A stretch of DNA of 64,000 nucleotides from Utricularia gibba (GCA_002189035.1 NEEC01000010.1:868001-932000); one strand, 5' to 3'; positions 3,694 through 63,409 are shown, counted from the stretch's first letter. Notes: generated from the letters alone by a model not told the origin. Numbers and translations: made by a program.

Positions 3694-4547
3694 ATGATGG
3701 AGTCGGGTGATTTTTTTCCGAAAATTGCAGTAGGTTGTGCGTTGCTTATTCAGGCTGTTGCAATGGTTTCAAAGAAGATTATTTTGGCTGCCCTTGCTGC
3801 GGCGCATTGCGTTGGTCAGCACTTATGTGTTATGCGAATTATGATTGTTATAATGTTGCATTTCTACTGTACACCAACCGATAGGAGAATTCGGTTCTCA
3901 TACCGAGAAAAGATATCGCGACAAATAGAGCATTTGACTGCTTTGTTATTTGATTCAAGGAGTGCTTGTCTTGAAAACTTACGATTAAGTGTAGATGTTT
4001 TCAACAAGTTGTGCTATGTTCTTCGAAGTAATGGTAGACTATCCACTTCAAGGTATGTCAATGTTCCAGAGTAAGTTGCATTGTTTTTGGGTATTTTAGG
4101 TCATCACAGGAAAACAAGGCAACAAAAATTTGAATTCATGCGAAGCAGCTGATCAGTGTCCAAATATTTCAATGTGGTATTGTCAACGGTGCTGTCATTG
4201 CACCAAAATTTACTTAAGACACCTATGCCAATTGATGTTTTTGATCCTAATTCTAGCTTCAGATTTTTCAAGGTATGCAAGGAGATTTTTCATTATAGTT
4301 GTGAATTTGCAATGTGTATTCTGCATGCTGTAATTTTCTGCTCTATTTTTCAGAATTGCTTGGGCGCATTAGATGGTTCATATTTCTAGGTGGAGGAATC
4401 GTAAAGGAATCGTGTCCACTAATGTGCTAGGAGTGTGTGATGAGAAGCTCAAGTTCATCTCTTTGTTGTCCGGTTGGAAGGTGTCCGCTGCTGATAGCAT
4501 GCTGCTTGATGTAGTTTGTCGACAAAGAGCATTCACTGTATGCAAAG
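3694..4547 (+). pseudogene. PIF/Harbinger DDE transposase, 5' two-thirds, disabled
   Basis: CLENLRLSVDVFNKLC...VPE*VALFLGILGHH...SVSKYFNVVL; GT-AG intron 4273-4353; NCLGALDGSY (first catalytic Asp); RWRNRKGIVSTNVLGVCDEKLKFISLLSGWKVSAADS; donor GT at 4548. Contains stops and a frameshift. Confidence 0.9.
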
Positions 4548-4587
4548 GTAAGTGCTTACAATGTGTATAAGTCCATAGTTATGAGTG

Positions 4588-5019
4588 ACTTTCATGCATC
4601 CACAAAACCGACACAAGCCTCTTGTCTTCAAGGATTTGAGGAAAGTATGGATGGCATATCCGACTTACGACACTCAGAATACGCTACTCATAGATGACTC
4701 ATCGGAGAAGGGATTCATCAACCCAGTGAGTTATAGTTCACTAATATAGCTTTTATATTAACTTTCTTTTTCTCACTTTCATTTTATCTTATAGCGGGGA
4801 AATTTCATATTTCCCTATACTTGCGACTACATGGATTGTCACGACAAAGCACTAGAATTCGGGGCTACTTATGGATTTCGTATTTGGTTGGGCGCTGCCG
4901 ATGATGTCCCATCGTATGTGGAGCGATGCCGTGTCGGACAGCCGTGGATTGACAAATGCAATCCACACTTTGCTTACTATTCAGATGTAGTTAATGCCCT
5001 ACTCAATGGAGGAGAATGA
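4588..5019 (+). pseudogene. 3' exons of an FCP1/NIF-like HAD phosphatase gene, joined by deletion to the Harbinger transposase intron
   Basis: QNRHKPLVFKDLRKVW...NTLLIDDSSEKGFINP, phase-0 GT-AG intron 4726-4794, then RGNFIFPYT...DVPSYVERCRVGQPWIDKCNPHFAYYSDVV...stop. Both exons are open. Confidence 0.85.
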
Positions 5020-6777: not shown

Positions 6778-9038
6778 ACGTCAGCTAAACTCTGCTATAT
6801 TATCTGAGCTAGCGGATGTTTTTGAAACAACAGAAATTGAATTTTGTTTCCAATATCTTTTCTTCTTCGTTTCTATCACCGGCTTACGTTCGCACATGGT
6901 GCAGTGAGCGTGGAGCAAACTTCTCCGATTACTCGGTGATTTCTGTTCGTGAAGATGACTAAAGCAACCGGTGAACCAATTCTGTTCGACTACAGTAATG
7001 GCGCCTTCATTGATCGTTCCGATCGGTTGGTGTTTAGCGGCTTCGATCACCGAGCATTGCTCTGGTAAATTCACCGTTAACCACACTAAACTACTTCGAG
7101 TGGCGACACAATGTGCGTCTAGTGCCCGGTTCTAAAAATAAATTAGGTTTCATTGATGGAGAGATTAGTTGTCCACCCATGACTGATCCGGCCTATAGTC
7201 TCTGGATCCGAAACGATTATATGATTATGTCTTGGCTTTTAGTTTCAACAATGCTTCCAGTTCACATGATCTATGGGTCTCTCTACAGAATCACTACGGG
7301 AGACTGAATCATAGTCAGTTTTACCAGATTCAGCATGACTTGTATCACTTGAAGCAGGGTGCTCTTTCTGTTGCAGAGTATTACACCAAACTCAGTGGCT
7401 TGTGGAAGGACTTAGAGACAGTTACGCTAGATATTGGATGTCATAATTGTTCTTTCCATGTCTCCACTGTAGTTGTTTTTGGCCCCATGAAGTTAACGAA
7501 GTTCCTACGAGGGCTAAGTGATCGATATGAGTCAATCAAGAATCAGATTCTTGTGATGGATGATCTCACGGTGGACAAGGCATACTCAATTCTACTTAAT
7601 GTAGAACAAGAAAAAGGGAAAGGCTCCATTCATCCTGAGGAGGCCTTCACTCATACTGCTATGTACTCTAAAGCTTCTGATCTTAGACATGATAATCCAA
7701 TGGCATGTCAGGTTTCTTCCAATAATTCTTTCATCGGAAACATTAAGAAGAGAGATGGAGGTTATTGCGATCATTTTAAAAAACAGGGCCACACACGTGA
7801 GACGTGCTTCATTCTCACTGGTAACTACCCATCCTGGTGGAAGAAAAGGGACTCTTCTGAGGGTCCTCGTTCTGCGGGACATGCTAAGCCCCTTTCTTGT
7901 CAAATGATGAATCTAGGCGACAACCGGTAGATGATTTTCACTCCGCATCTGTCACCCCTGCCTCTGAGGCTGCCATTAACCCTTTACGCCAGGAACTTCA
8001 TGCCTTGCAATATGAATTACGGAAATGGAATGCCTCTGGACAGCCCTCTGTGGCCCCTAGCCATGCCCCATCACAATCTTATGCTAACATGAGCATCCCT
8101 CATTATGTAGGTACATTACCTCTTGCACTCTCCATGCATATTAGGGTGACTGATGGCTTTGTGTGCCAGCCTTAGGGAGTGGATCATTGACTCAGGGGCG
8201 ACCACTCACATTTCTTTTACCATGCGTAACCTTGAGTTATTACCACATATTTGTGACATTTTTGTTTCTCTACCTGATGGATCCTCATGTCATGCTGGTG
8301 GGATTGGCACGGTTACTTTACAGCATGATGTGTGCTTACATCGAGCCCTCTATATTCCTTCATTTAAATTCAACTTACTCTCTGTACCTCGATTGCTGCT
8401 GACTTGAAAGTTTCTTTCCATTTCCTTGATAATGGTGGCTTATGTAGGCCCCGGACTCCAATAAGGTGCTTGTTGTGGGGCAAGTCCGCGATGGGTTATA
8501 CATCTTGGATGGGAGATCATGCTTGCCACATTTCACAGCCACCGCTTCTAAAGCTGTCTTCGCTTGTGATGACACTTCTTTGCATTCCTTATTCTCTGTA
8601 TTGTGAACCAAAGTCTCTTTCTTTTGTGGTTCCTCTTCACTTCTTGATAACTCTTTTTTGTGGCATTGTCGCTTGGGCCACATCTCTGAATCCAAGGCAA
8701 AGCACATGCCCATATCTTGTGGCATTCATTGGAACCATTGTGATATCTGTGAATTTTCTAAGTTTCATCGGCCAATGTTTCCCCATAGTGATTCGATTGC
8801 ACCCTCTAAATTCTTCCTTATTCATTGTGATTTGTGGGGGCCTTACAAGGTTGCTACCACCTATGGCACACGGTGTTTTCTAATGGTTGTCAATGATCAT
8901 ACACGTAGTACCTGGACTTTCTTACTCGCCTCAAAATCTGAGGCTTGCGTCCACATTGCTTGCCTACTTTGTTATTTCTCTCATAAGTTTGGGGTTGATG
9001 TCAAAAAAATCCATTGTGATAAAGGGGGTGAGTTCCTT
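6778..9038 (+). mobile_element. Ty1/copia (Ale/Retrofit-like) element, 5' part: partial LTR, PBS, gag, protease, integrase N-terminal half; degenerate
   Basis: SKNKLGFIDGEISCP...WIRNDYMIMSWLL gag; LTKFLRGLSDRYESIKNQILVM; knuckle CDHFKKQGHTRETC; protease EWIIDSGATTHI; LWHCRLGHIS; LIHCDLWGPY...IHCDKGGEF, then interrupted. The 5' boundary is uncertain. Confidence 0.9.
6897..6914 (+). other. Primer-binding site complementary to the tRNA-Phe 3' end
   Basis: TGGTGCAGTGAGCGTGGA directly after the LTR-terminal CA. This is a 17/18 match to the complement of the plant tRNA-Phe(GAA) 3' end (TGGTGCGGTGAGCGTGGA) as recalled. Confidence 0.75.
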
Positions 9039-9353
9039 TGTTGGAATAATGGGTATTGGAGAAGGGAGGCTCTATCCTATATTGCTGGTTAAACACATGT
9101 TTAACTCGTTTATAAGGGAAGGCAACCCAATAACCTTGATAGATTTGAGAGTGAGCTGGGCCTCGCGCGCACGCAGGGTCTTAATTTATTAGATCGGATT
9201 GGGCTTCCGGAGGGCCCCGAAACCCAGAAATGGCTACGCGCAAGGGGGGGGGAGGGTGTGCAAATCCACCCTAAAAGCCTCTCACGTGTGTGCAGCCCAA
9301 GCCCATGTTTTGCTCCGTTTTGTCTCGAGCCCATTAGGGTTTACGATTCAACA
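9039..9353 (+). repeat. 5' LTR (315 bp) of the nested Copia element
   Basis: TGTTG...CAACA termini; starts exactly where the outer integrase frame (KGGEF) breaks; TATA-like TTTATAAGGG inside. Confidence 0.75.
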
Positions 9354-11828
9354 TATATTCGACTGATTTCTGAGACTGAGACGGACAGTTCTCGAAGGGC
9401 CTCTTGAATCCTAGGGGATCGTGAAATCCTTTAGGACATCGTGTTTATATGCCTGAGTTCTTCATTTGTGTTCGATTTTCAACAATCTAAAGGATATTCT
9501 GGATGAATCCGATCGGTGCCTCTTCGGAAAATGCTGTGCCACCGCTGCCCGCACCTCCGGTGACCCGCACACTGTTCACCGACGCCACTCCAACACCGAC
9601 AATCTTCCCTGCTGCAGATCTGGTTGCTGTGCCACCGCTGTAGAAAAAGCATGTCCATCCAGTTCAAAATCTGCTCGCCTCTATGCCACAGGTCACCTTT
9701 GGTATCCGCGATCTGTCCCTGAGCCATCCAATTGTGGGACACCAATTTCCTGACATTGCGAAAATCGAGCCCTTTGATTGAATGAATTTTCGGCACTGGA
9801 AAGATCGAATCTTTGAGTTGATGGATATGCACGACGTTGCCTTGGCTCTTGATGTTTCCAAACAGGATGCCACTGACTCTGAGATCCTCGGTGTGGGCTG
9901 GGATTTAGTGAATCGGGTATGTCGTCACACCATTATTACCACCTTTGCTGATAGTCTCTTCGATGTGTATGTAGTCTACAAGGATGCTGCCTCCATATGG
10001 AAATCGATGACTGCCAAGTACACTGTAGAGGAGGCCATTACATCCAGATTTGCAGTCACTAATTTTCTACAGTGGCAGATGATTGATGACAAGGAGGTGG
10101 TTATTCAGATCAACGAATTCCATCGCCTCTTGGACAATATGGCTGCTCAAAACATCAAGTTGCCTCTAGAGTTTGTTATTGATGCACTGATCCACAAGCT
10201 GCCACGAGGATGGGATGACTACAAGGCAAGGATTCGTCAATCTGATCGCAAGAAAAAGGGCCATTGTTTTTTCTGTGGTAAGCTAGGGCACTAAGCAGCA
10301 CCGTGCACGCACAGGAAGATTGGCAAACCTGGTAGTGAGCCTCCCAAAGCCAATGTTAACATGGCTTAGGGGGATGATAATGATGAGATGATTGTCACCA
10401 TGCTCGGTTACTTGAACCTAATTGAGGCCACTGGTGATTGGATCATGGACTCTGGAGCAAACCGTCATGTTTGCTTAAGGAAGGAGTACTTCTCCTCCTA
10501 TAGTCCTCTTGGGGGTGACAATCACGTGATCAAGTTTGCTGACAAGTCTACTACTCCAGTGCCTGGAAAGAGAGAAGTCACCCTGAAGTTCACCTCAGGG
10601 AAGACTGTACTTCTGAGAGATGTGCTGCATGCTCCTGCCATAAAGACCAATGTCATCTCAACTATCCAGAAGGATAAGTGTGGCCTAAATATCAACTTAG
10701 GCAATGGGGCTGCTGTGGTGATGAAGAACAATGTCTTTGTTGGGAAAGGATACATCGGTATTCAGGAGCTATATGTAATGAATGCTACTGTTATTTTTGA
10801 GAATAAAGTTGATTCTACTTATATGATGTGTTCTTTTGCTATCTAGCATGCTAGACTATGTCATGTGAACTAAGCCTACAATTAGCCTTGATTCCTAAAT
10901 TGCATGAGCTACTTGCTAAGTGTGAGACTTGTGTAGAGGCAAAGATGACTAAGAAATCCTACTTTTCTGTGACTAAAGAATCTGAATTGCTTGCATTGAT
11001 TCATTTAGATGTATGTGATTATAAGACGTGTGTATCTAGAGGTGGCAATAAGTTTATGGTTACTTTCATTGATGATTGCTCTAGATATACTCGTGTGTAT
11101 TTGCTGAGACATAAATCTGAAGCATTTGAGAAGTTTTTGCTATTCAAAGCTGAGGCAGAAAACCAACTTGACAAGAAAATAAAGAGAGTCAGATTTGATA
11201 GAGGGGGTGAGTATGTATTATTCAAGGACTTCTGTGAGAAGCATGGAATAATACATGAGACTACTTCTCCCTACTCCCCTGAGTCAAATGGAGTTGCTGA
11301 GAGGAAGAATAGGACATTGAAGGAAATGATGAATTCAATGCTTATTACTTCTAGCACTGCAGATGAAATGTGGGGGGAAGCGATTCTCACAGCTTGTCAT
11401 GTTTAGAACAGGATCCCACATAAGAAAACAGGCAAAACTCCATATGAGATATGGAAAGGCTATGCAACAAACCTAAGTATTTAAGGGTGTGGGGGTGCTT
11501 AGCAAAAGTGATGTTACCTGATCCTAAGAAAAGGAAGATTGGATCAAAAACATCTGATTGTCTGTTTATAGGATATGCACAAGGGAGTGCTGCATATCGA
11601 TTCCTTGTGATCAAGAGTGATGTCCTTGATCAGTATACAATAGTGGAAACAAAGACTGCTGAATTCTTTGAGCACATCTTTCCTCTAGCAGGAAAACACC
11701 AAGATGATGGTGATGAGACACCTATTACTGAACCTGTTGAAACTAGTGAACCCTTGGAGGAAGTGCCTCTGAGACGAAGCAAAAGGTAGAGGACAGAGTC
11801 TAGCTTCGGCGATGACTTCTATGTGTAT
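9039..11828 (+). mobile_element. Second Ty1/copia element (TAR/Ikeros-like) nested in the integrase of the Ale-like element; 5' LTR, gag, protease, integrase; truncated before RT
   Basis: LTR 9039-9353; gag IEPFD.MNFRHWKDRIFELMDMH; WIMDSGANRHVC; VTLKFTSGKTVLLRDVLH; FIDDCSRYTRVYLL...RFDRGGEY...SNGVAERKNRTLKEM; YLRVWGCLAKV; ends RRSKR*RTESSFGDDFYVYLI. Confidence 0.9.
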
Positions 11829-13420: not shown

Positions 13421-14691
13421 ATTTTGATTATACTTTATTGGGATATTTTATCAAGTAATTTTTGGCAGGTTTGTATGGAAGTTCTACCCCTAGAGAAGTC
13501 AACTCAAATGCCCCTGCTTCTGCAACCTCCAAGCACAACAGCAAGGGATGTTGCTGCCCATAAATGATCAAAGATTTGAGTGAAGTGCAAGAAATGAAAA
13601 GGGGAGTGATAGACTCCTCCCTTAACAAGTAACCTGCTGCTGAACTTATTTCATGTATTTTTATTTTTATTTTTATTTTTAGCTTTAATTTTCCTTAGGA
13701 TCTTGTACGTGTATGTGTCTATTAGTCTATGCTAGGAGTAGTCAATGCTTGTTTGTTTGTATTGTTTAATGTCAGTGAACTACTTTGAATGGCCATATGA
13801 TTGAACATTGTAATTATGAGATGATTTGGATGTATGAGCTTTCTATGCCTTTTATATACTTGGGAGAATGTTTTTACCTTCTATTTTATGAGAGCATGTG
13901 CATGAATAGAGGAACTTAGGGAGTGTTATCTAGATTAGCTTAAATTGAGCTGCTGGACTTCATCATCGTCTTGGGACAGGTTGCTGAAAATATGATGAAT
14001 GATCTGGGTAGACTTAGGTTATTTGAAGTTGTGAGTGTAGGAACATGGTAAATTAAATTAGGAACCTTAGCATGAAACCACCTAAAGATTCTTAAGGCAT
14101 CTTCGTATTATTCTAAGTTAGAACCAGTACCTGTTACTTTAGCATTAAGACCTGATATTGTTTACTAATCTTGTTTACCGAACTTGTTACCTTAGCGTTA
14201 AGATCAAATTATGCATTTACTAAAACACTTAGCAAACACAAGCTCTTCGTGATTGACCCTGACATCCACTATACAAGTTTTCTAAATTTGTATCTTGTGT
14301 AGATTAGGGATTATAAATTTATTTGATACAGAAGTTTTCTTTAATTGCAACGATATGCTAAAATTTCCGTTTATCAGCACTCGATCCAAATAACATCGAA
14401 GGAATGAGTGTAATAAGATTTTAAAATAAAAAAATATGCACTCAATCCAACTAACACTTAGGGCGTGTTTGGGTGCTGGGCTTGGCCTAAACACAGGTTT
14501 AGTTTATTTGGGTTTAGGTAACCCGGTTTTATGGGCTTAGGGGGTGTAAATCTTGTTTGGTTGATGGGTTTACATTATTTGGGTTTAAATGAACCCATGT
14601 TTTGAGTGAATTTTACGATTTACTTGTTGTAAGTGCTCGGTGTAGGTGCTTTGTTCTTGCTGTTTTCTTTCCTCCAACACAGATTGCAGGT

Positions 14692-15729
14692 ATGCATAGT
14701 CCAATCGTGGTGGAAGACTCTCACAAAAAAACGAAACGCACCTGGAAGCTAGATGAGGAGAAAGACTTGTTGCACGCTTTGAAGTAGATAGTGAAAGAAG
14801 GCTGGAAAATTGAGAATGGTTTTAGGGGTGGGTATCACCGAGTGTTGGAGACAGAGTTCTTGAAACTGCACCCTACAACCGACATCCGCACACACCCGCA
14901 TATATCTAGCAAGGTGCATACCTTGAAAAAAGACTACTACCTTCTTGTAGATTTTTTATCAAGGGCGGGCACCGGTTTTAGTGAGCTGACCTAATCGTAG
15001 ATGCAAATGAGGAGGTTTAGAAGGAGATTGATCAGGTATGTATGCCATGTTCTCGCGGTGTTATATTCAGTGCTTACCGTGTTATTATGTCAGCACGCAC
15101 CTAGGCTGCGCTTGCTAAGACACAAAGCGTGGCCATATTACATGGAGTGGCAGGAAATCTTTGGAAAGGATCGGGCAACAGGAGATAGAACGATGAGCTA
15201 TGTAGTCGCGACCAGGAAGAGGAAATTCACGGAAGATGTTGGGGAGAATCTGGAAGTCTCTTCAGATTGCCCTCTGTACCCAGATAGCACTGGACAGGAT
15301 ATGAACTTCTCGTATGCTGACCCAATTGGTAATGCTACGGAGGGTGTGAATCTCACGTCTAGTAGGGACTTCGAGTCACACAACAGCACCGACTCGTCAC
15401 GGTGGACTGGACGAAGCGGCAGGGGACCCAGGGGAATTGATGATGATGTGCAGTTCCTTAAAGAAATGAAGGAGCTGAACTTGCGCACATGTGAAGAGCT
15501 ACGTCACTTGGGGTTAACAGTGGTGCAGCAAGCGCGGGAGTTGGCGGACAATCAGCATCAAGCAGGGGAGATCATTAGAGATATGCCGTTGCAATTAACT
15601 GCCATCGAACATTTTACCATAGCAGAGACGATTAGTTCCAACCCTGCGAGGTTGCGCTACTTCCTTACCTCCAGCGACTTTGAAAGAGAGCTTATTGTGC
15701 GTGGTTTAGCATCCGAATGTAGATCTTAA
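14692..15729 (+). pseudogene. Harbinger ORF1, Myb/SANT-like DNA-binding protein, disabled
   Basis: KRTWKLDEEKDLLHALK*IVKEGWKIENGFRGGY...HPHISSKV...GTGF...KAWPYYMEWQEIFGKDRATG; in-frame TAG at 14786-14788, a further stop/frameshift near 14990, and one probable intron (about 15035-15093). Confidence 0.9.
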
Positions 15730-16225
15730 ATCTGTTGTGCGGTGCTTCGCCTTATGTTGGACTCATGGACTAGATGTATTTCATCTTCTAATCATCCTTT
15801 AAGCAAATATACGGTATTTCACATGAAAATATAGGCGAAGGATGACTACATGTAACTGGTATGAGCACTGCGAAGGGTTCCTCGTTGGTATGAGAACTGC
15901 AAAGGGTAGACAGTGTTCTAACTTCGTATGTGGAAGCATCACGTATGAACAAGCGCGGTGATTCGTTGTTGAGCACTCTTCCGCAAACGCGGTGCTGCAA
16001 CTACCGCCACATTCTGTGCGGTGCTATCGAGTAGTGATGGACTAGCACCACGTTGGTGTTTCATATTACGAAGCACCACGTTTAGACACAAGGTTTCAAA
16101 TCCAGTGATGGTGCAGGATGTTACAACATGCGGTGCCACCGCAATCAGTGGTCGATCAAAAACTAATAAAGTCAACATACGATAGTTCACGTAAGATCCA
16201 TGCAATTTCAAAGGTACATCATCGA

Positions 16226-17150
16226 TCACACAATACTCTTGTAATGCTTCCACAATGGGTGTTCCTCATCTATTGGACGTTGACCTACCCGACGGAGATC
16301 GACGTGCGTGGGTACATCCATTACGTCAATGAGAGCTTCCAAGAACGACCTAATATCTCCCCCTTGAACTAGGGAACAATCATTGACCGTGGTGTACTTG
16401 AAGGTGGTTGGGAATATGGCATTTTCAGGCTGTCCAATGAAAGTAAACAATCATTGGATGCAAGATGGTGGAGAATGAGCGCGACCAGAAACTCACCGGG
16501 TTGTGTAGTGACTTGTACGATGCATCATCGATGAGTAGTGTATTAAGACGGTGATATTTGCCCTTGAACTCAGTGTTGGCGCCCCATACATGATTCAAAA
16601 GCTTAAGCTTAACCGTGTTGTTCCTGTTGTCGTGCACCGGATAACCTGTGTCCACACACCTTGATCCATCCCATTGGAAGACAACCTTGCTGGCTGCTGC
16701 AGGCCCTAGTAACCACTGAACCACATCATGCAATTGTTCACTAACACATGTTGTAAGAAAAAAGAAAGGTCAGCAGGAATGTGGATCCCCTTGCCTGCAA
16801 GGTGGTCAATCTTACCGTCCCCTTGAAGACCAGATGGCGACATCAAAGTGTTCCATGCAAAACTGTATCAACTCACGTGCACTTGGTCGAATATACACTA
16901 CAACCATAATAAATAGTACTGACATATGCACCAAATATTAAATGCATATCAAATACACCGCATTACCATTTCGCTCGTAGATGACGGCATCCGGCTTCGG
17001 CGCTCCCCACCTGACTTCGTGAGGATACACAATGTACGCAAGTACGCCATTCACGTCAAATATTAACAACTTTCGTGGTGGGAGCTGTGTTATCACTCGA
17101 CACTCCACCATATGGCCAGCTTTGTTCATATCATGCAAGCCAACCACAGA
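16226..17150 (-). CDS. FCP1/NIF-type HAD-superfamily phosphatase-like domain (3' part of the Harbinger third gene); four exons, open frame
   Basis: Exons about 17150-16967, 16897-16816, 16740-16497 and 16429-16226, with GT-AG introns of 69, 75 and 67 nt that splice in frame without stops. Reads RKLLIFDVNGVL...VYIRPSARELIQFCMEHFDVAIWSSR...WDGSRCVDTG...NTLLIDDASYKSLHNP...AIFP...GGDIRSFLEAL...stop. Confidence 0.88.
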
Positions 17151-18060
17151 GTTCAAGATTCTTTGCGTACAATCTCTTCACTTCGATATACTTTGTAGTG
17201 GCAGCACCGCACCCATCGTCGTGTGTCTAGATCGGTGTTGGCCCATCCGTGTTGCCCCTGACTTCTGGTTGTACTTCTTCATCCTCTTCATGGGTCACCT
17301 CCTCAGGATCTTCATTCGTACTCCTACGTTGTCTACGGTGTCGAGGGGTTCCAAACCACGGATGTTGTGTCCTAGGGGCATTGACAAAGGGGGGCCATAC
17401 GTCCTCCAGTGGGAATACCTCTATGCCTACAACGACAACAGCAAAAAGCATGAGTACTGTTAGAATATCCGAAGTAATTGTTTGTGATCACTTGATGGGT
17501 GTCCCACATTCTCTGAGACTATCAACGCTGTTGGTCATTCTGGAGCGGTGGGTGGGTATACCCATATAAAACTAGTCCACCAATCATCATATGCGCTTCT
17601 TACGTCTATAACCAGAACCACTCCTGGTTTTCCATGAATCGAGTAGTGCGGACTTCCCTTACGTTGCACACAAACAGAAACCGCAAAGAAGATGCATTTC
17701 CTGGGGTATATCCTCCTCTTCACAGATGTGCAGAAATGCGAGTACGTGCGCCACATAACGTGGTGTGAGGTGGGAGAGTGGGATATGGAGTGCAGCAAGT
17801 ATCTGCACCAAGAAAGGGGGCGGGGGCAGTCGCAATCCACACCGAAAGTGCTTGGTGCTTACGGCGAATCCCAATGCTCCAACTCTGGATGGGGGTTCGC
17901 CGTCGGCCGTTTCACCCGATAGTTTATCCCACATAGCGTAACCGTCGGGAATTGAGAAGCGGGCAAAGGTTCCTATCGTCGCGACCCTATTCTAGAGAGG
18001 TTGTCAACGAGATTGTCTTCACGGTGCTGTTGCGCGGTTGCTGAAAGGGTGCAGTTGGAT
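17151..18060 (-). pseudogene. 5' part of the third gene: Transposase_28 ('putative gypsy-type') like domain plus acidic/Pro-rich linker, disrupted
   Basis: RFSIPDGY...KHFRCGLRLPPPPFLVQILAALHIPLSHLTPRYVAHVLAFLHICEEEDIP, then (frameshift) HYSIHGKPGVVLVIDVRSAYDDWWTSFIWV. Fits the FxxGLRLP..F..LL...QL.P...AF..C / W..F..R.G...S...W...F..V pattern. Linker EDPEEVTHEEDEEVQPE at 17227-17451. Confidence 0.65.
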
Positions 18061-18565
18061 GGGCGAAATTAATGAAGTTGTTTTGGAAAGTGTTCAATGT
18101 CAGGCGCCTTTATTGTGCGCAAAGGGGTATTAATAGCGCTGGGCGGTTGTCAACCAAATGGCGCATTGTTGTACTACCAAATGCCCTCACTACTATGCAC
18201 CAGCGTCACACTCATCTACTTTTTAAATTTTGACAGCACCGGATACGATGAAACACGTGGTGCTGCTAATAACTTTGGTGTCATACAAGCCTCTGTAGCA
18301 CCTCGTCTAAAGATCGCGGTGTTGGCTCCAATGATCCACCTTGTGGTACCATGTTACCCATGATAAGACATGACACTACGGTACAATCCCAACATTTTTT
18401 GCAGCAACCACCAAATACGATGGAAACAGGTGTTCAAGTTGGAGTATCAACTAGAGATTAACTTGTTGTGACTTTGCTGAGCAAATCCAGTACAAACGAC
18501 ACGATAGGTTCTGAATGGGAATTTAGGAAAACCACTAGCATGACAATGTGTAAAGCAGTGCTACA

Positions 18566-19659
18566 CTAGGGGCGTTTGTGGGATTCCAGCCACTTGGTGT
18601 ACATCCGCTCAGCTTGCTGGTCACGCCACCTATTCCATGCCTGATTGCCTTCGGCAGATGTCGTGATGTCTTCTCTTTCACTCGTGTCCCCAGTTTTATC
18701 CTGAAAGTCCAATAGGACCTGATCCTCCAGGGGATCGACCACCATCTCCTTTCGAATGTGGTTATTGAGCAAAGCACATGCCAATACAATGCGGTTCTGT
18801 ATGTTTACCAAATAGTAGCTAGCCGTCCATAGTATACCCCACTGCATTTTCATCAAGCCCCAAGCTCGTTCGATCACATTTCTGGCTGATGCATGCCACA
18901 TGTTGAATAGCTCCTTCGCATTCTGAGGTGCTCCATTTCCGTGTCCCCACTCCTTCAAGTGGTAACGGACTCCACGGTATGGTGCCAAAAAGCCCTCCCT
19001 ATTGGCGTATTCATTGTCACATAGGTAATATGTTCCTGTGTCATCACGTATACATGATGCATAAAATCATTGGAATCACATGCGCACAGACTAAACAAGT
19101 GAAATACCTGGGCGTACACGGAAGCCGTCGGATCGTGAGAGTGCATCGTTTAGCACTCGACTATCTGCAGCAGACCCCTCCCAGTCAGCAAGCACATATA
19201 TAAATTTCATGTGTTCATCACATACACCCAAGACGTTGTTGGAGACACAGTCTCGGTTCTCCTCCCATAGACATCCTTCTGCACCCACATTTTTTTATGA
19301 TGACCTAATATTCCTAAAAACATACAAACCATCTCTGGAACCATTACATATTTTCCAACTTTTAAGTTAGAACGATTTTCTAATAGGCTACATAAAATAC
19401 CCAAGGCATCTCGGTTGATTCTTAAATTCTCAATGGATGCGCTATTCACATCACTCACCAACCTACTAATATACTCAACTTGTCTAGGAATCTGGTGTGT
19501 AAGTGAATACCTGCGTCTCAACCTATATCCCCTACGGTATTTCCTCCAATATAAGTATACTAACACATTCATCTGTAGTATTCGGTCAAAACTGCAGCTG
19601 CCGCACTCAAGATGACATGACCCTCCGTGAAAAAATCCATGTCCCCTCAAAAGTCGCAA
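18566..19659 (-). pseudogene. PIF/Harbinger DDE transposase with an internal deletion
   Basis: ENLRINRD...EMVCMFLGILGHH...TETVS jumps straight to NNVLGVCD...WEGSAADSRVL (GAxDG motif missing); intron after VRPG; last exon open YYLCDNEYANREGFLAPYRGVRYH...ELFNMWHASARNVIERAWG. Confidence 0.92.
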
Positions 19660-20117
19660 AAATCAAGCAAAATAAATCCACACACATAGCACCACAGATT
19701 CTGAAATTGGAAATTCACAGATAAAAACCCACTATTTGGTGCTGCCGTGCTTGGCCTCTCGCGGTGTTACCGTGGACCAACCCACTAAGAACAGAAAGCA
19801 TACTTACCGAAAGACCCACTCTTTTTGCGCTCAAAGAACACGCGACGCCACCGGCAAATCACGAATGTAGATCTGGGTTGTTGATCTGCGTTCAAATGTA
19901 GTTCATGCGAGGGCAAAAGTGGAAGTGCCGGGCTGGGTTTAGCTAAACCGACCCCCCCCCTCCCCCGGGTTTAGCTAAATCCAGCTCCACGGGTTCCCGC
20001 CCAGTTTATGATCAATAGGTGAGTTTATTTTTACCGACCTGAAACCCACGAACCAAACGTGGGTTTATGTTTAAACCCACGCCGCAAACCACCTAAACCC
20101 AACAACCAAACGCACCA

Positions 20118-20680
20118 TTAAGGATCGATTGATGAGTAATACAAATTTAAAATACGGGCATGGGTTAACTATAACCCACACCATGCGATTTCTTAAAGAC
20201 ACCACGAAATCACATACGGGCGTATGTTATGGCTAATCCACGCTCATAGTTGACAAAGTGGTGGCTTAACAGATTCCATTCGGGTGAACCTCACCAGCCG
20301 GCACGATTGATCAGTGATTTTCTTCATCTCAATTTTGCATCGCCTGAGGTTTTCTTCTTGGGAATGAGGGATTCCATTGCAGAAGGGAGGGAAAAAGAAA
20401 TAATCGACTCAGATTGTAAAACACATTAATTTAGAGTATTTGTTTCCATTAATTATTAATAATTTATATTTTTTCTCTCAATAGAACATTACATGTTACT
20501 TGAATCAAATGTATATTTTTTTATTTTAAGTTTTTATTATTAGTCGATGCTTACATATTATTTGAATCAAGTATATATATTTTTATTTTAAATTTGCATT
20601 GCTCATCAATCGAACATTACGTGTTCTTTGGATCAAGTGCATGTTTTGTTTTATTTTAAATTTGTCTTATCCATCATTAG
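20118..20680. repeat. Family X: remainder of a compact two-armed copy with approximately 60-bp tandem subrepeats at both outer ends
   Basis: Forward units at 14350-14460 and 20118-20170 (split by the Harbinger), reversed units at 20480-20680; 20300-20460 matches 25960-26110. Confidence 0.65.
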
Positions 20681-22175
20681 ATCCTTAGTTGCTATTTATA
20701 TTTGGAAAATACCTTAATTTAGAAATAATTTACAAATTATATTTGAATTATATTTAGTATTTTTAATAAACATATTAAAATTATTTGATAGTTAAATTTA
20801 ATCATCAAAATTCAATAAAATTAACATTTGACTTTAAATTATGTATATATTGATATTGTAAACCATATCTTTTATTTTTAAATTTCGAAAAACTTAATTT
20901 AAATTATTAAGTATTCTCTAGAAGTGATAAATTTAAATATATATTATAAATAATGTTAAAGAAATTTCAAATTTGTTATCTATGATCGTTGTTCAGATAT
21001 TGTAAAGCGGGATTATTGAATCAGGCAAAACATAAAAAAATATGTGATTTGCAAATTATTAATAACTTGTAAATATTTATAAAATAAATTAAAGTTGAAG
21101 TGATTCAATATATAAACTGAAACACATAAATTTATGTATGTCATTGTTTTCTATTGTAAAACAGTTTCAATAAAATTAAATTAAATCTCTAAAATTCATT
21201 AAATATGCAATATGAATATGATTAACTGAGAATGAAATATATGTGGGATATTATTGTTTGAAAAATAATCATTAAATTGATTAAAATCATAATTTATTTT
21301 TATTGAAATTGTATATTAGTATGTTTATTAAAGATATCAAAAGTAGTTTAATGTTCAAAAACAAGGTGTTTTACAAATGAAATTGTGTAAGTAAATGTAT
21401 ATAGCCAATGTGTTTCAAACTCAGGTATTTTGAAAATGAATTTATAAATGTTACCTATTCAACTAAATTTCTCTCCAATGAGGTGTATAATATGTTTATA
21501 CTAAATAAAAAATATACATTTGAACCTAATTAGGATTAACCATCGAATGCTAACCAAATTCGTAATAGACGAAAAATAAGCACTCGATCCAACACAAAAA
21601 AATGATGAGTCCAAAATAAAAACCAAGCCACCAAATGATTGAATGGCAATACCTCAATAAACCGTTAGCCGTCACTCATTCGAGTCCTTTGTTCTATTTT
21701 GATCGAGTAACTATAATTTATCAATTTTAAATTTCTGTTAAGCTTTCATTCGATCTAAAAAACGCGTAACGCTCGAACGCCTTCCTTCTGTCAATGTGAT
21801 AGGGGGTGTGTGACGATCAGCCAAGACACCCTAGTCGGGCAACCATCACCGCGCACGTGCAGGTAGCGAGACCGCGCAGCACACTCCACCTGTGTGGGCG
21901 TCATGTGCCATGAGTCGTGGGCGTGCACTTGGCACCGCCTCGCCCGTGTGCGGAGTTCCGTCTCGCCATATCGATCGCGTGCGGGGTTCTGGGTATAGAG
22001 GTTAGCGCAGCGCAAAAGACCAACTTTTATTCATTACGAGCAAATACTAATCAAGTGAGAAAGCAGAAAAAGTGCACGAAAACAAGTAAACGAGAAGAGT
22101 TCGATGTTGCGCTCTAGTCCGCCCCTTGACTCCACTTCTCGGCCACTCCACCCTCACCATCCGCCCCTACCATTC

Positions 22176-60239: not shown

Positions 60240-63130
60240 TACGCTCTCGATCCAAATAACACGTGATTTAAAATGACGTCCCTCACAATGTGACAAGAGG
60301 TACTTTGGGGAAATGGTATATCATCCATCTACTCAACATTATTAATAACGTCAAACTATATATGTGCATTAAATAACACACCGAAGCTCATGGAATAGGG
60401 TTCGATATTAACGGCAAATTTGGATCGAATGAACAAATTGTGTGGTATTTATGGTGGAAAAAGTCCCACACTGCTCATCTGTGCTTATTGATTTACGTCG
60501 AATGTATTGAAATGTTTTTTAACAAATACGAAACTGCACACGTAGGTTAGGCATAACCAACAGGGGTTAGACATAAGTCGGCCTAGTAATATTATAAGTC
60601 ATAATAAATGGTGATGTAATGTATTTTACATGTAATTAAAAGAGATATGGCAATCATCTCACGAACATAGAACATTAACTAGATATTGGGAATGGAATTA
60701 AGAGAAAAAAAATATAACTTATAAACGATAGGTGTGTTTACCATATGATTGGATTAGTTCCTTTTCTCTCCTTGTTGTAATGGATTCCCGTGTTCCGAAA
60801 GAGAAACTATCGGGTGATGCGAAATCGAGATGAGAAGATCGTCGATCGATCACGCTAGCAGGTGACGTTGATGAAGCATCACCCAAGACTTTTCAAGAAA
60901 GCCATAGAATGTAGCATTCTCTACACCAAGTCCCTTCAAATTCTCTTCAAATTCACGCTAGCAGGTCTTCAAATTCTCTTCCGCCACTCCAGCCGGTGTG
61001 CCGATCTGTTTTCGATAGAGTGAACCCTTCATCCAATGAAAATCGGGCCACTTGTTGTAACAACCCGCAACCTGCACCCTAGACGCTAAGGCCATTACCG
61101 ACACCTGAACACTCAACAAGGTTGTCCCAATCATCGTGGTGTAGGCTAGGAACATGGTTATGGGTGCATCTTTCCCTTGTTTTAGCGACTTGGGAGGGCA
61201 ATGTAGGAGTTAGGAATGAACATGGGCACGGGTCGGATCCCTGCCGAGCTATTTATGAAATCTTGACTTGTCGGATAAAGGTTAACGGATTATGACCCTC
61301 AACTCATCCCAGATACGGGTGAACTCCTGTATCCGTGTTGACTCAACCAGAATAAACATAATAAAAATTTATACCCATGTACGCAATGCCTGGTAATTAG
61401 ACAAATCATCTTAAAGAATTTTATACTCATTTTGTTAGACACAATGAATTTGAGATAACTTTGGGGTATTCAGACTTAGGAATTTAATAAAAAATAATGC
61501 AATAAAAGAATCTAATCCCTCCTTTAAAAGATCGAAGCATAGAATGCATCATTTTTTTATTAAAAAAAGCACTCTATCCTTAAAAGGCATAAGGATGCAT
61601 TATTTTTTTTATTAAAATACTATTGCACTCACCCTCCACTTGGGTATGCCACCCACCACATGGGCACGGGGTACGTGATGAATGTTGGAATGTGTTTGCT
61701 AAAAGTCGCGGTCTAGCACATTCAACTCATCAAAAAAAATTTATAAACCTAGCTATTCTATTATACAAATCACTGGAATTAATCTAGTCTGATAAGCAAG
61801 GTTAGAATCCACAGAGAATGATTGCAATTTCTTGAAATCTTTTACATTTACTAAAAATATAGAGGGGTTTTTTGGGGGTTTAGCTCTCATGTGTGTAAGA
61901 CATAAAATAACAACAATTGAAATGAAAAAGTTGCAAGGATGAAGAAGCACCGGAATTAACATGAATGTGCAGAAAACATAAAGTGAAAGTGACTTGGCTG
62001 GGTTTTACACAATGGTCTAACTCTTGTGTCACTCAAGAGAGCTCATAGGCTTAAACTCAGTTTTAACATGTTAAAAACAGGGCAGAGGGTCGTGGGAGTA
62101 GTAAACATGTTAAACTTAACCAAACATGAAGAGCTTAAATATAAAGAAGTTCATTAGAGATTTTTCGTTCACACCAAAGCATCAGAAATGTAACAAAAAG
62201 TATGGAAAGAAAAAAGTAACAGTAGCAAGTTCAACAACATAAATGAAGTGCAGAAAACGAAAATAAAAGTATCAGGCTGCTTTTGTGGACTGTAGATATG
62301 CTGAATCTGAAGTTCTGGGTGTAGATTTGGTCTAAAAAACGTAGATCTGAGGCTGGTCGAAGCTGTTCACCAGAGAAATACAACCTTGCTCACGCTCCTC
62401 ACTGTTCTCTCTCATCTCTCTCATCTCTCTCTTCTTCCTCTTTCCTTTTCTTGCTCAAAGGAAAGGTATCTCCATCTTTTACATGGGCTTTTAGAAGGAA
62501 GATCTATTCTCTAGATCTTATCTTTTCAAAAGGTGGCTTTTTCTCAACTTTTCTACTCCTTTTGACTTGTCAACATGAAAAATGCGTTGCCAGTACTAAC
62601 TCTTACCCTGTTAAGACTTTAACATAGACTAGAGGAAAAAATGAGAGTTTTCAACTCAATTGTTGCGAATGGAGCATGTTTTCACAATAAACACATTTCA
62701 ACAAACTACACAAGAGGAGACAATTTAGCACACTAAAGAATATTTAACCCTACAAAATATGGTTTGAAATACAATTGGTATTAAAAATATTACTTTTGAA
62801 ACATATATAGTTAACGTTATTGATAATGTGGGGTAAATGGGTGATGTACCGTTTTCCCAAAAATTAGTTCGTAAAATACCCCCTGTCGCATTGTGAGATG
62901 TACATCGTTCTAAATCACATGTTATTTGGATCGAGAGCCTATTTTGTTTTATTTTATTTTGTATTATTTGGATTCTTAGTTGTTATTTGAAGCGAAAGCA
63001 TATTTTATTTTATTTAAAATTTGTATTACCCGTCCATCCTTGCGCGTTATTTGGCTCGAGTGCGTGTTTTTTTTATTTTAAATTTGTATGACTCGTCAAT
63101 CGATGCTTAATTGTTATATGGATCCTATGC
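60240..63130. repeat. Family X two-armed copy: forward arm 60240-61000, internal module 61050-61490, reversed arm plus 60-bp array 62757-63130, interrupted by an Athila LTR
   Basis: 60245-60360 is the reverse complement of 62800-62940; the modules match the other copies listed. Confidence 0.7.
61676..62757 (-). repeat. Athila-like solo LTR, slightly truncated, same family as 30471-31571
   Basis: Starts TGATGAA(T/C)GTTGGAATGTGTTTGCTAAA exactly as at 30471 and is collinear for about 1.08 kb; no adjacent PBS. Confidence 0.85.
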
Positions 63131-63409
63131 ATATTAGCTATGAACACTATTCCCGCATCGGAGGAATTTGGGAATCCCCTACGGACGTTGGTTCCGGTTA
63201 ACCCACGCCCGTATGGAATCTACTAATGGTCAGACAGGGGCGTCGGTTAGCCCAACTCACGCCCGTATGTGATTTATTAGTGCCTCTTAGAAATCGCATA
63301 CCGGCACAGCCTGTGGCTAACGCACGCCTATATGTTTTCTTTTGCACCCCACGAGCCTAGCTTGTGCATGTACTATATGAGTTAAATAACGACGGTTTTT
63401 ATTCTCACA

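What the first reader, a model, noticed from the sequence alone, without database searches (positions are those of the whole stretch)
14461..20117. PIF/Harbinger transposon carrying a third gene: an intron-containing FCP1/NIF-type HAD phosphatase
Seen: a complete element (TIRs, TTA TSD) with Myb/SANT (+) and transposase (-) converging, and between them a spliced gene on the transposase strand whose four 3' exons encode a full FCP1/NIF-like domain. Established: plant PIF/Harbinger elements normally encode only two proteins; FCP1/SCP-family enzymes dephosphorylate Ser/Thr substrates such as the RNA polymerase II CTD; some plant transposons (VANDAL, via VANC) encode dedicated anti-silencing proteins. 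Inference: this may be an undescribed three-gene Harbinger lineage whose extra protein modulates transcription, silencing, or the phospho-state of the transposase/Myb complex. I do not recall a description of it but could not search.
Basis: partly seen in the sequence, partly recalled or inferred. Interest (0 to 1): 0.88.

Follow-up and report, generated by a model that had tools for sequence, protein, structure and literature searches.

The report
Three-gene Harbinger transposon, decayed copy
This is a real but dead copy of an abundant plant cut-and-paste transposon family. Besides its two usual genes, the family carries a third, intron-containing gene that joins a retrotransposon-type domain to a host-derived phosphatase-like domain; I found no description of this arrangement.

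Summary
Window 14461-20117 is a PIF/Harbinger insertion with an exact TTA duplication. Paralogous "empty" copies of the flanking repeat prove the boundaries. It has a Myb-like gene (+), a DDE_Tnp_4 transposase (-) and, between them on the transposase strand, four GT-AG exons that splice into an open 214-aa NIF/FCP1-homology domain.

- A Transposase_28 (TRP28) exon lies upstream of the NIF exons.
- The domain has D-x-N, not the catalytic D-x-D-x-T, as does the whole plant clade it belongs to.
- This copy is dead: the transposase has lost its first catalytic block, the Myb gene has a premature stop, and the third gene has frameshifts and stops.
- The cargo is not private to this copy. DNA runs of the same organism hold thousands of diverged contig pieces covering all three genes about evenly. 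A second, diverged, deleted copy at 3694-4998 shows the same transposase-to-NIF order.

The NIF part keeps 41 of 50 host-invariant residues, and its three introns sit where a host gene has introns. This indicates old DNA-level capture followed by selection.

The nearest database relatives (Lamiales) are two-gene elements. No RNA evidence was found and the function is untested. The scan has flagged this family repeatedly elsewhere in this genome.

The parts
14458..14460 (.). left target-site duplication TTA
   Evidence: a single TTA in the paralogous empty sites
14461..14480 (+). left terminal inverted repeat (GGGCGTGTTTGG...)
   Evidence: 15 of 20 match the right end; subterminal pair 14555-14581 / 20085-20111
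14692..15729 (+). Myb/SANT-like gene (Harbinger ORF1) with a premature in-frame stop at 14785-14787. Further stops at 14992-15000 probably lie in a short intron.
   Evidence: frames; tblastn to Myb genes of related elements (E 6e-19 to 3e-18); that neighbour carries PF12776; an RNA contig of a related copy reads C at 14785, which removes the stop.
16226..16429 (-). third gene, last exon (NIF exon D, stop at 16226-16228)
16497..16740 (-). third gene, NIF exon C (motif IV: LLIDD)
16816..16897 (-). third gene, NIF exon B (motif II: WSS)
   Evidence: PF03031, E 0.0027, below the cut-off on its own
16967..17426 (-). third gene, putative exon 2: acidic linker plus NIF motif I (FDVNGVL, from 17081). 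In this copy it is broken by TAG at 17229-17227, TGA at 17133-17131 and one extra base at 17083.
   Evidence: all DNA contigs read C (+ strand) at 17131, turning TGA into TGG, and most lack the base at 17083. The upstream extent is inferred.
17663..17934 (-). third gene, putative exon 1: Transposase_28 (TRP28) domain starting at ATG 17934. There is a 2-nt deletion near 17691 relative to a third to a half of family contigs. Candidate donor AAC|GTAAGG at 17662.
   Evidence: PF04195, E 3.6e-9, 37.2 bits against a cut-off of 26.2. (AC inserted at 17691/17693)..
18566..19659 (-). Harbinger transposase gene (DDE_Tnp_4) with an internal deletion of about 250-300 nt, junction about 19243-19267, that removed the first catalytic Asp block. 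The second D (LCDNEY) and the E (VIERAWG) are kept.
   Evidence: the two flanking segments abut here but lie 230-306 nt apart in four relatives; 8 contigs diverge at 19243, and their reverse complement reads ARYRNRKGVI followed by SNNVLGVC.
20098..20117 (-). right terminal inverted repeat
   Evidence: contigs of run X5 diverge into unlike flanks at 20113.
20118..20120 (.). right target-site duplication TTA
3694..4998 (+). second, diverged, internally deleted copy of the same arrangement: transposase N-terminal half (keeps CLGALDGSYF) joined directly to NIF exons C-D
   Evidence: tblastn 37-49% aa, E down to 6e-20. frames; host NIF proteins also hit 4591-4998.

Best explanation
Window 14461-20117 is a decayed, non-autonomous-by-mutation copy of an abundant PIF/Harbinger family of this plant. 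Its closest database transposases are from Lamiales.

The family's internal region holds three genes: the usual Myb-like gene, the usual DDE transposase, and a multi-exon cargo gene on the transposase strand. The cargo gene has a Transposase_28 (TRP28) exon, a domain otherwise known from antisense ORFs of Retand LTR retrotransposons. It is followed by an acidic linker and a complete NIF/FCP1-homology HAD domain of the plant 'D-x-N-G' clade.

Shown:
- The NIF part entered as genomic DNA of a host gene, because its three intron positions coincide with host introns.
- It has since been carried inside Harbinger lineages long enough for synonymous sites to saturate, while the residues that define the fold were kept.
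- It is as abundant in the family as the two core genes.

Inferred (about 25% confidence in the specifics): the product is an accessory factor of the element. The TRP28 part would bring it to DNA, chromatin or the element's own proteins. The NIF-like part, which lacks the general-acid Asp, would bind or only slowly dephosphorylate a phospho-Ser/Thr partner such as the RNA polymerase II CTD or the Myb-transposase complex. This would resemble the plant PMD-PP7 modules.

In this particular copy all three genes are broken.
For: - Boundaries and TSD.
- Domains.
- Exon structure: exact GT-AG exons giving 214 open codons.
- Capture as genomic DNA: 3 of 3 intron positions are shared with the Canna indica host gene P0009, which has two more.
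- Family-wide presence: 768, 1528 and 3719 Logan contig pieces from three DNA runs of the same organism lie on the element at identities from 80% to above 99%. Summed word depth over the third gene is about 0.7-1.3 times that over the Myb and transposase genes.
- Second diverged copy with the same gene order. Between the two copies the NIF is 40% identical and the transposase about 42-43%.
- Transposase tree: the two copies group together against three two-gene relatives, support 91/92.
- NIF tree: the tree with the two NIFs held as one clade is 62.7 log-likelihood units better than the free quick tree, AU p 0.97.
- Constraint: 41/50 host-invariant columns are kept, against 38/100 moderately conserved and 13/57 variable ones. 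The remnant keeps 21/29.
- Codon-position identity between the two copies is 55%, 64% and 32%; dN is 0.61 and dS is saturated.
- Not a described architecture: no PF04195 in 114 NIF relatives or in the sequence check of all 150; no mixed cluster in the Atlas; no paper. The PHIS review gives two ORFs (PMC4482050). The Retand paper reports no sequence similarity outside TEs or to other known TEs (PMC11963269).
Against: - No transcript evidence. The RNA runs of this organism were available only as Logan contigs. Four such contig pieces, all under 90% identical, lay on the element, and none lay on the third gene.
- The join of the TRP28 exon to the NIF exons is not proven. No open model could be built from this copy even after two family-supported corrections, so they could be two genes.
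- The three nearest relatives inspected lack the cargo, so it is dispensable for Harbinger transposition as such.
- Both TE-borne NIFs sit on very long branches (1.9 and 2.5 against a median of 0.25). Long-branch attraction could create their apparent clade.
- Independent capture from two diverged host paralogues is not excluded. In that case part of the constraint signal was earned in the host.
- Contig depth is not a copy number.
- I had no access to the rest of the genome or to related plant genomes.
Confidence: 0.72

Rival explanations
1. Passive cargo. A host gene fragment and a piece of a Retand element were transduplicated into one Harbinger progenitor and hitch-hiked as that lineage amplified. 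The cargo never served the element and is simply decaying.
For: The nearest relatives are two-gene elements. There is no RNA signal. The gene is broken here. Branches are long, meaning fast evolution relative to host genes. C>T and G>A changes dominate among copies, as in silenced repeats.
Against: Decay is not uniform: 82% of host-invariant columns are kept against 23% of variable ones. Third codon positions are near random while second positions are 64% identical between the two lineages. All six splice sites of the NIF part and its 214 codons remain open in a copy whose other genes are damaged. The arrangement survives in two lineages about as far apart as the transposases themselves.
Confidence: 0.2
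2. There are four genes, not three. The TRP28 ORF (17934 to about 17535) and the NIF ORF are separate transcription units that merely lie head to tail.
For: No open spliced model links them in this copy. With the family's 2-nt insertion, the TRP28 frame runs on to a stop at about 17535. The window's own frame offers an ATG upstream of NIF motif I.
Against: They lie on the same strand, and about 85 nt closed in all three frames sits between a good donor and a strong polypyrimidine acceptor at 17427. The phase-1 donor at 17662 fits that acceptor. Family contigs turn the TGA at 17131 into TGG, which opens the linker frame into NIF exon A. Other first-stage notes on other copies read one five-exon gene (unchecked).
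Confidence: 0.25
3. Nested or chimeric locus. The TRP28-NIF segment is an independent insertion or a host gene, and only this locus juxtaposes it with Harbinger parts.
For: Nested insertions are common in plant repeats, and this element itself sits inside another repeat.
Against: Depth and contig counts are similar over all three genes in three runs. A second copy has the same order. No internal TSD or TIR brackets the segment. Many other notes record the same architecture elsewhere in this genome (unchecked).
Confidence: 0.03

Closest known systems
Canonical two-gene PIF/Harbinger elements (Ping/Pong type); the nearest here are Lamiales elements in Salvia splendens (L004), Sesamum calycinum (L005) and a Logan contig (L006)
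   Same: DDE_Tnp_4 transposase 50-57% identical, Myb_DNA-bind_3 partner gene, TTA target duplication, GGG..GTTTGG-type inverted ends.
   Different: Those relatives have nothing between or beside the two genes that matches NIF or TRP28. Here about 1.7 kb of a third, spliced gene lies between them.
TRP28 (Transposase_28, PF04195) antisense ORFs of Retand (Tat-lineage) LTR retrotransposons (PMC11963269)
   Same: The same Pfam domain, scoring above the curated cut-off. It is carried by a mobile element and its function is unknown; the paper predicts DNA binding.
   Different: Here it sits in a DNA transposon, on the transposase strand, and is apparently joined to a HAD-fold domain. The paper reports no similarity to other known TEs. 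No protein of 50-159 aa shared enough words to score, so the domain is very diverged.
Plant 'D-x-N-G' NIF/FCP1-homology host proteins, e.g. Erigeron XP_043635805, Helianthus 'putative FCP1 domain, HAD superfamily', Canna indica WOK99680, Sphagnum KAH8970694 (often auto-named TIM50)
   Same: Same domain from end to end, the same D-x-N-G motif I, 41/50 invariant residues and three shared intron positions.
   Different: At most 45% identity and a branch about eight times longer than the host median. It has a TRP28 N-terminus instead of the host N-terminal regions or DUF724. It is embedded in a transposon.
Canonical FCP1/SCP/UBLCP1 phosphatases (nearest solved structure to the host clade: UBLCP1, 3shq)
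   Same: HAD/NIF fold signature: nucleophile Asp, Ser of motif II, Lys, and DD of motif IV.
   Different: The second Asp of D-x-D-x-T, the general acid/base, is Asn (one search aligns LDIDYTL with LDVNGLL). From memory, the Scp1 D98N change is used as an inactivating mutation. Activity is therefore doubtful.
PMD-PP7 modules (MAIL3 fusion; MAIN/MAIL1 with PP7L) in Arabidopsis (PMC7156037)
   Same: A transposon-derived domain of unclear biochemical role is coupled, in cis or in trans, to a phosphatase-fold domain and linked to transcription and TE silencing. Such fusions arose more than once.
   Different: Different domains on both sides (PMD rather than TRP28; PPP rather than HAD). Those are host genes, whereas this one is still inside a mobile element. 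The analogy is one of logic, not homology.
DNA-transposon lineages that keep a host-derived or extra gene: ULP1-protease MULEs/CACTAs and VANDAL VANC (recalled from memory, not checked here)
   Same: A cut-and-paste family propagating an additional protein beyond its transposition machinery.
   Different: Different superfamily and different cargo. No sequence relationship was tested.

Membership tests
PIF/Harbinger superfamily | DDE_Tnp_4-type transposase | tested here: met
   PF13359, E 1.3e-7 and 1.3e-4 on two pieces; 329 homologues, all with PF13359
PIF/Harbinger superfamily | Intact DDE catalytic triad (autonomous copy) | tested here: not met
   The first-Asp block (GA[IL]DGTH) is deleted at about 19243-19267. 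No D[GAS][TSC][HYFQ] motif occurs in any frame of the - strand (the transposase strand). Relatives hold 230-306 nt there. Family contigs carry the missing sequence.
PIF/Harbinger superfamily | Second gene for a Myb/SANT-like DNA-binding protein | tested here: met
   tblastn E 3e-18 to 6e-19 onto partner genes of three relatives, one annotated PF12776. Direct Pfam scan of the pieces found nothing. There is a premature stop at 14785.
PIF/Harbinger superfamily | 3-bp TTA/TAA target-site duplication and short terminal inverted repeats | tested here: met
   TTA on both sides and a single TTA in the paralogous empty sites. TIRs match at 15/20.
NIF / FCP1-homology HAD phosphatases (PF03031) | Match to the family profile above its curated threshold | tested here: inconclusive
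   Only exon B alone hit PF03031 (17.8 bits, cut-off 21.8). The spliced protein has no reference, so it could not be scanned. Membership rests on homology: E 3e-18 with exon C and tblastn E down to 5e-29 to proteins that hit PF03031 at 1e-14 to 1e-42.
NIF / FCP1-homology HAD phosphatases (PF03031) | Catalytic motif I D-x-D-x-(T/V) | tested here: not met
   The element reads F-D-V-N-G-V-L. The Asn aligns with the second Asp of UBLCP1.
NIF / FCP1-homology HAD phosphatases (PF03031) | Motifs II (Ser/Thr), III (Lys) and IV (DD) | tested here: met
   WSS, the conserved Lys, and LLIDD are present and aligned with host-invariant columns
NIF / FCP1-homology HAD phosphatases (PF03031) | Phosphatase activity | not testable with these tools
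   Needs an enzyme assay
Plant D-x-N-G NIF-like clade | Invariant D-x-N-G and the clade's roughly 50 near-invariant positions | tested here: met
   115 of 119 scored motifs in the 150 nearest proteins are DxN and none is DxD. The element keeps 41/50 invariant columns and the remnant 21/29.
Transposase_28 / TRP28 (PF04195) | Profile match above the curated threshold | tested here: met
   37.2 bits against 26.2, E 3.6e-9, profile positions 3-62 of 69. The nearest Atlas clusters are all PF04195.
Transposase_28 / TRP28 (PF04195) | [quoted passage not shown] | tested here: not met
   It lies inside a TIR/TSD-bounded Harbinger, on the transposase strand
Pack-type transduplicate (Pack-MULE-like gene-fragment carrier) | Non-autonomous element without its own transposase, carrying a recent host fragment at high nucleotide identity | tested here: not met
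   Transposase and Myb genes are present. The best host identity is 45% aa. The cargo is shared by the family and by a diverged lineage.

The most novel reading that the evidence does not exclude
The TRP28-NIF-like protein is a working, transposon-encoded regulator. TRP28 targets it to the element's DNA or to chromatin. The D-x-N HAD domain captures or slowly dephosphorylates a phospho-Ser/Thr partner, such as the RNA polymerase II CTD or the Myb-transposase complex, and so promotes the element's transcription or blunts silencing. By Rosetta-stone logic this would also predict that stand-alone TRP28 proteins of Retand retrotransposons work with host D-x-N NIF-like proteins. That would give both orphan families a first functional handle.
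Probability: 0.15. Interest if true: 0.85.

Novelty: new variant of a known kind. Interest (0 to 1): 0.58.

Why it matters
PIF/Harbinger elements are textbook two-gene transposons. A lineage that has kept a third, spliced gene under constraint would be a natural experiment in how DNA transposons acquire accessory functions. The cargo joins two poorly understood plant protein families. One is TRP28, so far described only in Retand retrotransposons and of unknown role. The other is the D-x-N branch of FCP1-homology proteins. The physical fusion suggests that the two work together, and that can be tested directly. It parallels the PMD-PP7 modules that act in plant gene regulation and TE silencing. 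For genome annotation, the family is a source of spurious 'FCP1/TIM50-like' and 'gypsy-type transposon' gene models.

Tried and rejected
- Self-comparison by blastn found no other nucleotide-level copy in the window. Only protein-level search found the remnant.
- Myb C-terminal ORF and TRP28 exon against 5.8 billion proteins: no scoring hit.
- Looking for TRP28, transposase or Myb segments inside the 150 nearest NIF proteins and by Pfam census of 114 of them: none.
- Atlas searches for a mixed PF04195+PF03031 cluster: none.
- Context of a short legume NIF gene (L003): a host gene with no Harbinger parts.
- Helianthus and Bidens host loci: no DNA was served. The Sphagnum locus is an intronless transcript.
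- RNA contigs: nothing on the third gene.
- Enumerating spliced models from ATG 17934 to NIF exon A, with and without two family-supported corrections: only models that skip motif I came out, so the exon 1-2 join stays tentative.
- The free quick NIF tree did not join the two TE copies. The constrained tree was better. I treat this as compatible with one clade, not proof.
- dS between the two copies could not be computed because it is saturated.
- I could not identify which NIF relative carries a PMD domain.
- The spliced 214-aa protein was not sent to Pfam, PDB or structure prediction because it has no reference.
- Rejected readings: single-copy capture, recent Pack-type capture, assembly or nesting artefact.

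Full report
**What is there.**
- The stretch 14461-20117 is flanked by TTA at 14458-14460 and at 20118-20120.
- Its ends are imperfect inverted repeats of the PIF/Tourist type, 15 of 20 by eye. The repeat finder listed only a subterminal 27-nt pair.
- The boundaries do not rest on the repeats alone. The element sits inside an AT-rich repeat unit, and paralogous units at 20580-20672 and 63070-63145 run straight across the junction with a single TTA. This is an empty-site proof of a 5,657-bp insertion with a 3-bp duplication.

**The two core genes.**
- On the minus strand, two pieces match DDE_Tnp_4. The C-terminal 166 aa find 329 homologues, the best 50-57% identical. These come almost entirely from Lamiales: Salvia, Sesamum, Buddleja, Perilla and Striga.
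- On the plus strand, 14692-15729 is the Myb-like partner. Pfam saw nothing in its pieces. They do align at E 1e-17 to 1e-19 with the partner genes of three related elements, one of which is annotated Myb_DNA-bind_3.

**The third gene.**
- Between the two core genes, on the transposase strand, four exons are separated by GT-AG introns of 69, 75 and 67 nt. They are 17081-16967 (the NIF part of a longer exon), 16897-16816, 16740-16497 and 16429-16229.
- They splice into 214 codons without a stop. The product is colinear from end to end with plant NIF/FCP1-homology proteins.
- Exon C alone scores E 3e-18 against 1.84 billion cluster representatives. The top hits are PF03031 proteins from Asteraceae, Canna, legumes and Sphagnum.
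- Upstream, an ORF starting at ATG 17934 matches Transposase_28 (PF04195) above Pfam's cut-off. A first-stage note on the same stretch had suggested this, and I confirmed it.
- According to PMC11963269, TRP28 is the hallmark of antisense ORFs of Retand LTR retrotransposons. Its function is unknown, it is predicted to bind DNA, and it shows no similarity to other known TEs.

**Not a canonical phosphatase.**
- Motif I reads F-D-V-N-G-V-L. The Asn replaces the second Asp of D-x-D-x-T, which serves as general acid/base. The alignment of a host relative with UBLCP1 (3shq) shows this.
- This is not decay. In the 150 nearest proteins, 115 of 119 scorable motifs are D-x-N and none is D-x-D. D, N and G are invariant or nearly so in both alignments.
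- The cargo therefore belongs to a plant-wide D-x-N-G branch of the family, often auto-named TIM50. Motifs II-IV are present. Catalytic competence is doubtful and cannot be tested here.

**This copy is dead.**
- Transposase: the two segments flanking the first catalytic Asp block abut at about 19243-19267. They lie 230-306 nt apart in the remnant and in three relatives. No DGTH-like motif exists in any frame of the minus strand, the transposase strand. Eight DNA contigs diverge from the window exactly at 19243, and their reverse complement reads ARYRNRKGVI in frame with the window's SNNVLGVC.
- Myb gene: an in-frame stop at 14785-14787. A related RNA contig reads C at 14785, which removes it.
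- Third gene, relative to family contigs: a 2-nt deletion near 17691 that shifts the TRP28 frame, one extra base at 17083, and a TGA at 17133-17131 that every DNA contig reads as TGG. A TAG at 17229-17227 has unknown status in the family.
- With those family states, a five-exon model becomes plausible: donor at 17662, acceptor at 17427, then one long exon into motif I. I could not obtain an open model from this copy and there is no RNA support. The TRP28-NIF fusion is likely but unproven.

**A family trait, not a private capture.**
- Three DNA runs of the same organism yield 768, 1528 and 3719 contig pieces on the element, spread from above 99% to below 90% identity. C>T and G>A changes are in excess.
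- Summed depth over the third gene is comparable to that over the Myb and transposase genes, about 0.7-1.3 fold. Depth is not a copy number, but the evenness along the element is informative.
- Inside the window, 3694-4998 is a second copy that is unrecognisable at the nucleotide level. It has a transposase N-terminal half, with its CLGALDGSYF block, running directly into NIF exons C-D. It is an internal-deletion derivative with the same gene order.
- Between the two copies the NIF is 40% identical and the transposase 42-43%.
- On a small transposase tree the two copies group against the three two-gene Lamiales elements, 91/92 support.
- For the NIF domain, the tree with the two copies held together is 62.7 log-likelihood units better than the free quick tree, AU p 0.97. 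Both sit on very long branches, so attraction cannot be excluded.
- The scan's notebook lists many further notes of the same architecture elsewhere in this genome, and one earlier follow-up reached a similar verdict. I treat these as leads, not evidence.

**Origin and selection.**
- All three introns of the NIF part coincide with introns of the Canna indica host gene, which has two more. The domain was therefore taken up as genomic DNA, not as a retrocopy.
- The capture is old. The best host identity is 45%, and no protein among about 15 billion is closer than 38% to exon C.
- Divergence is strongly non-uniform. The element keeps 41 of 50 host-invariant columns, 38 of 100 moderately conserved ones and 13 of 57 variable ones. 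The remnant keeps 21 of 29 invariant columns.
- Between the two copies, identity by codon position is 55%, 64% and 32%. dN is 0.61 and dS is too saturated to compute. This is the signature of long purifying selection on the fold.
- Caveat: if the two copies stem from independent captures, part of that signal was acquired in host genes.

**Distribution and novelty.**
- The three nearest relatives for which I could fetch DNA (Salvia splendens, Sesamum calycinum, one Logan contig) are ordinary two-gene elements without any NIF or TRP28 match. The cargo is therefore lineage-specific and dispensable for transposition as such.
- I found no protein combining PF04195 and PF03031.
- I found no paper linking Harbinger with either domain. 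A survey of the superfamily describes two ORFs.
- The nearest conceptual parallel is the PMD-PP7 module of plants.
- I rate it a new variant of a known kind: a real, abundant, three-gene Harbinger lineage with an unusual chimeric cargo. Its function is open, and this particular copy is a fossil.

Noticed in passing
window 20119-20687, 14411-14456 and 62950-63135: AT-rich MITE-like or tandem inverted-repeat units (36-46-nt arms, 80-89% complementary). The Harbinger is inserted into one unit. DNA-run depth at 14300-14498 is several-fold above that of the element, so this is a high-copy repeat.
   Followed up: partly
window 7232-11789 (+): Copia-type retrotransposon ORFs (gag with zinc knuckle, integrase core) in several broken frames.
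   Followed up: no
alignment A1 (host-type NIF proteins): One of 71 D-x-N NIF proteins also carries a Plant Mobile Domain (PF10536, E 1.3e-8). This would be a second pairing of this NIF clade with a transposon-derived domain. I could not identify the member.
   Followed up: partly
proteins P0001-P0006 (Asteraceae and a JGI contig): The closest host relatives carry two tandem D-x-N NIF domains, and in two of the six (P0005, P0006) a C-terminal DUF724 as well.
   Followed up: no
window 17535-17662 (- strand): After the family's 2-nt insertion, the TRP28 frame stays open through what the five-exon model calls an intron. Two family-versus-window differences there (17655, 17601) are synonymous in that frame. 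It is either a longer TRP28 exon or a relic of the captured ORF.
   Followed up: partly
run X5 ('plant metagenome'): It holds contigs identical to the window over 384-518 nt (17571-17954, 18062-18578, 18564-19041), so DNA of the same or a very close plant is in that sample.
   Followed up: no
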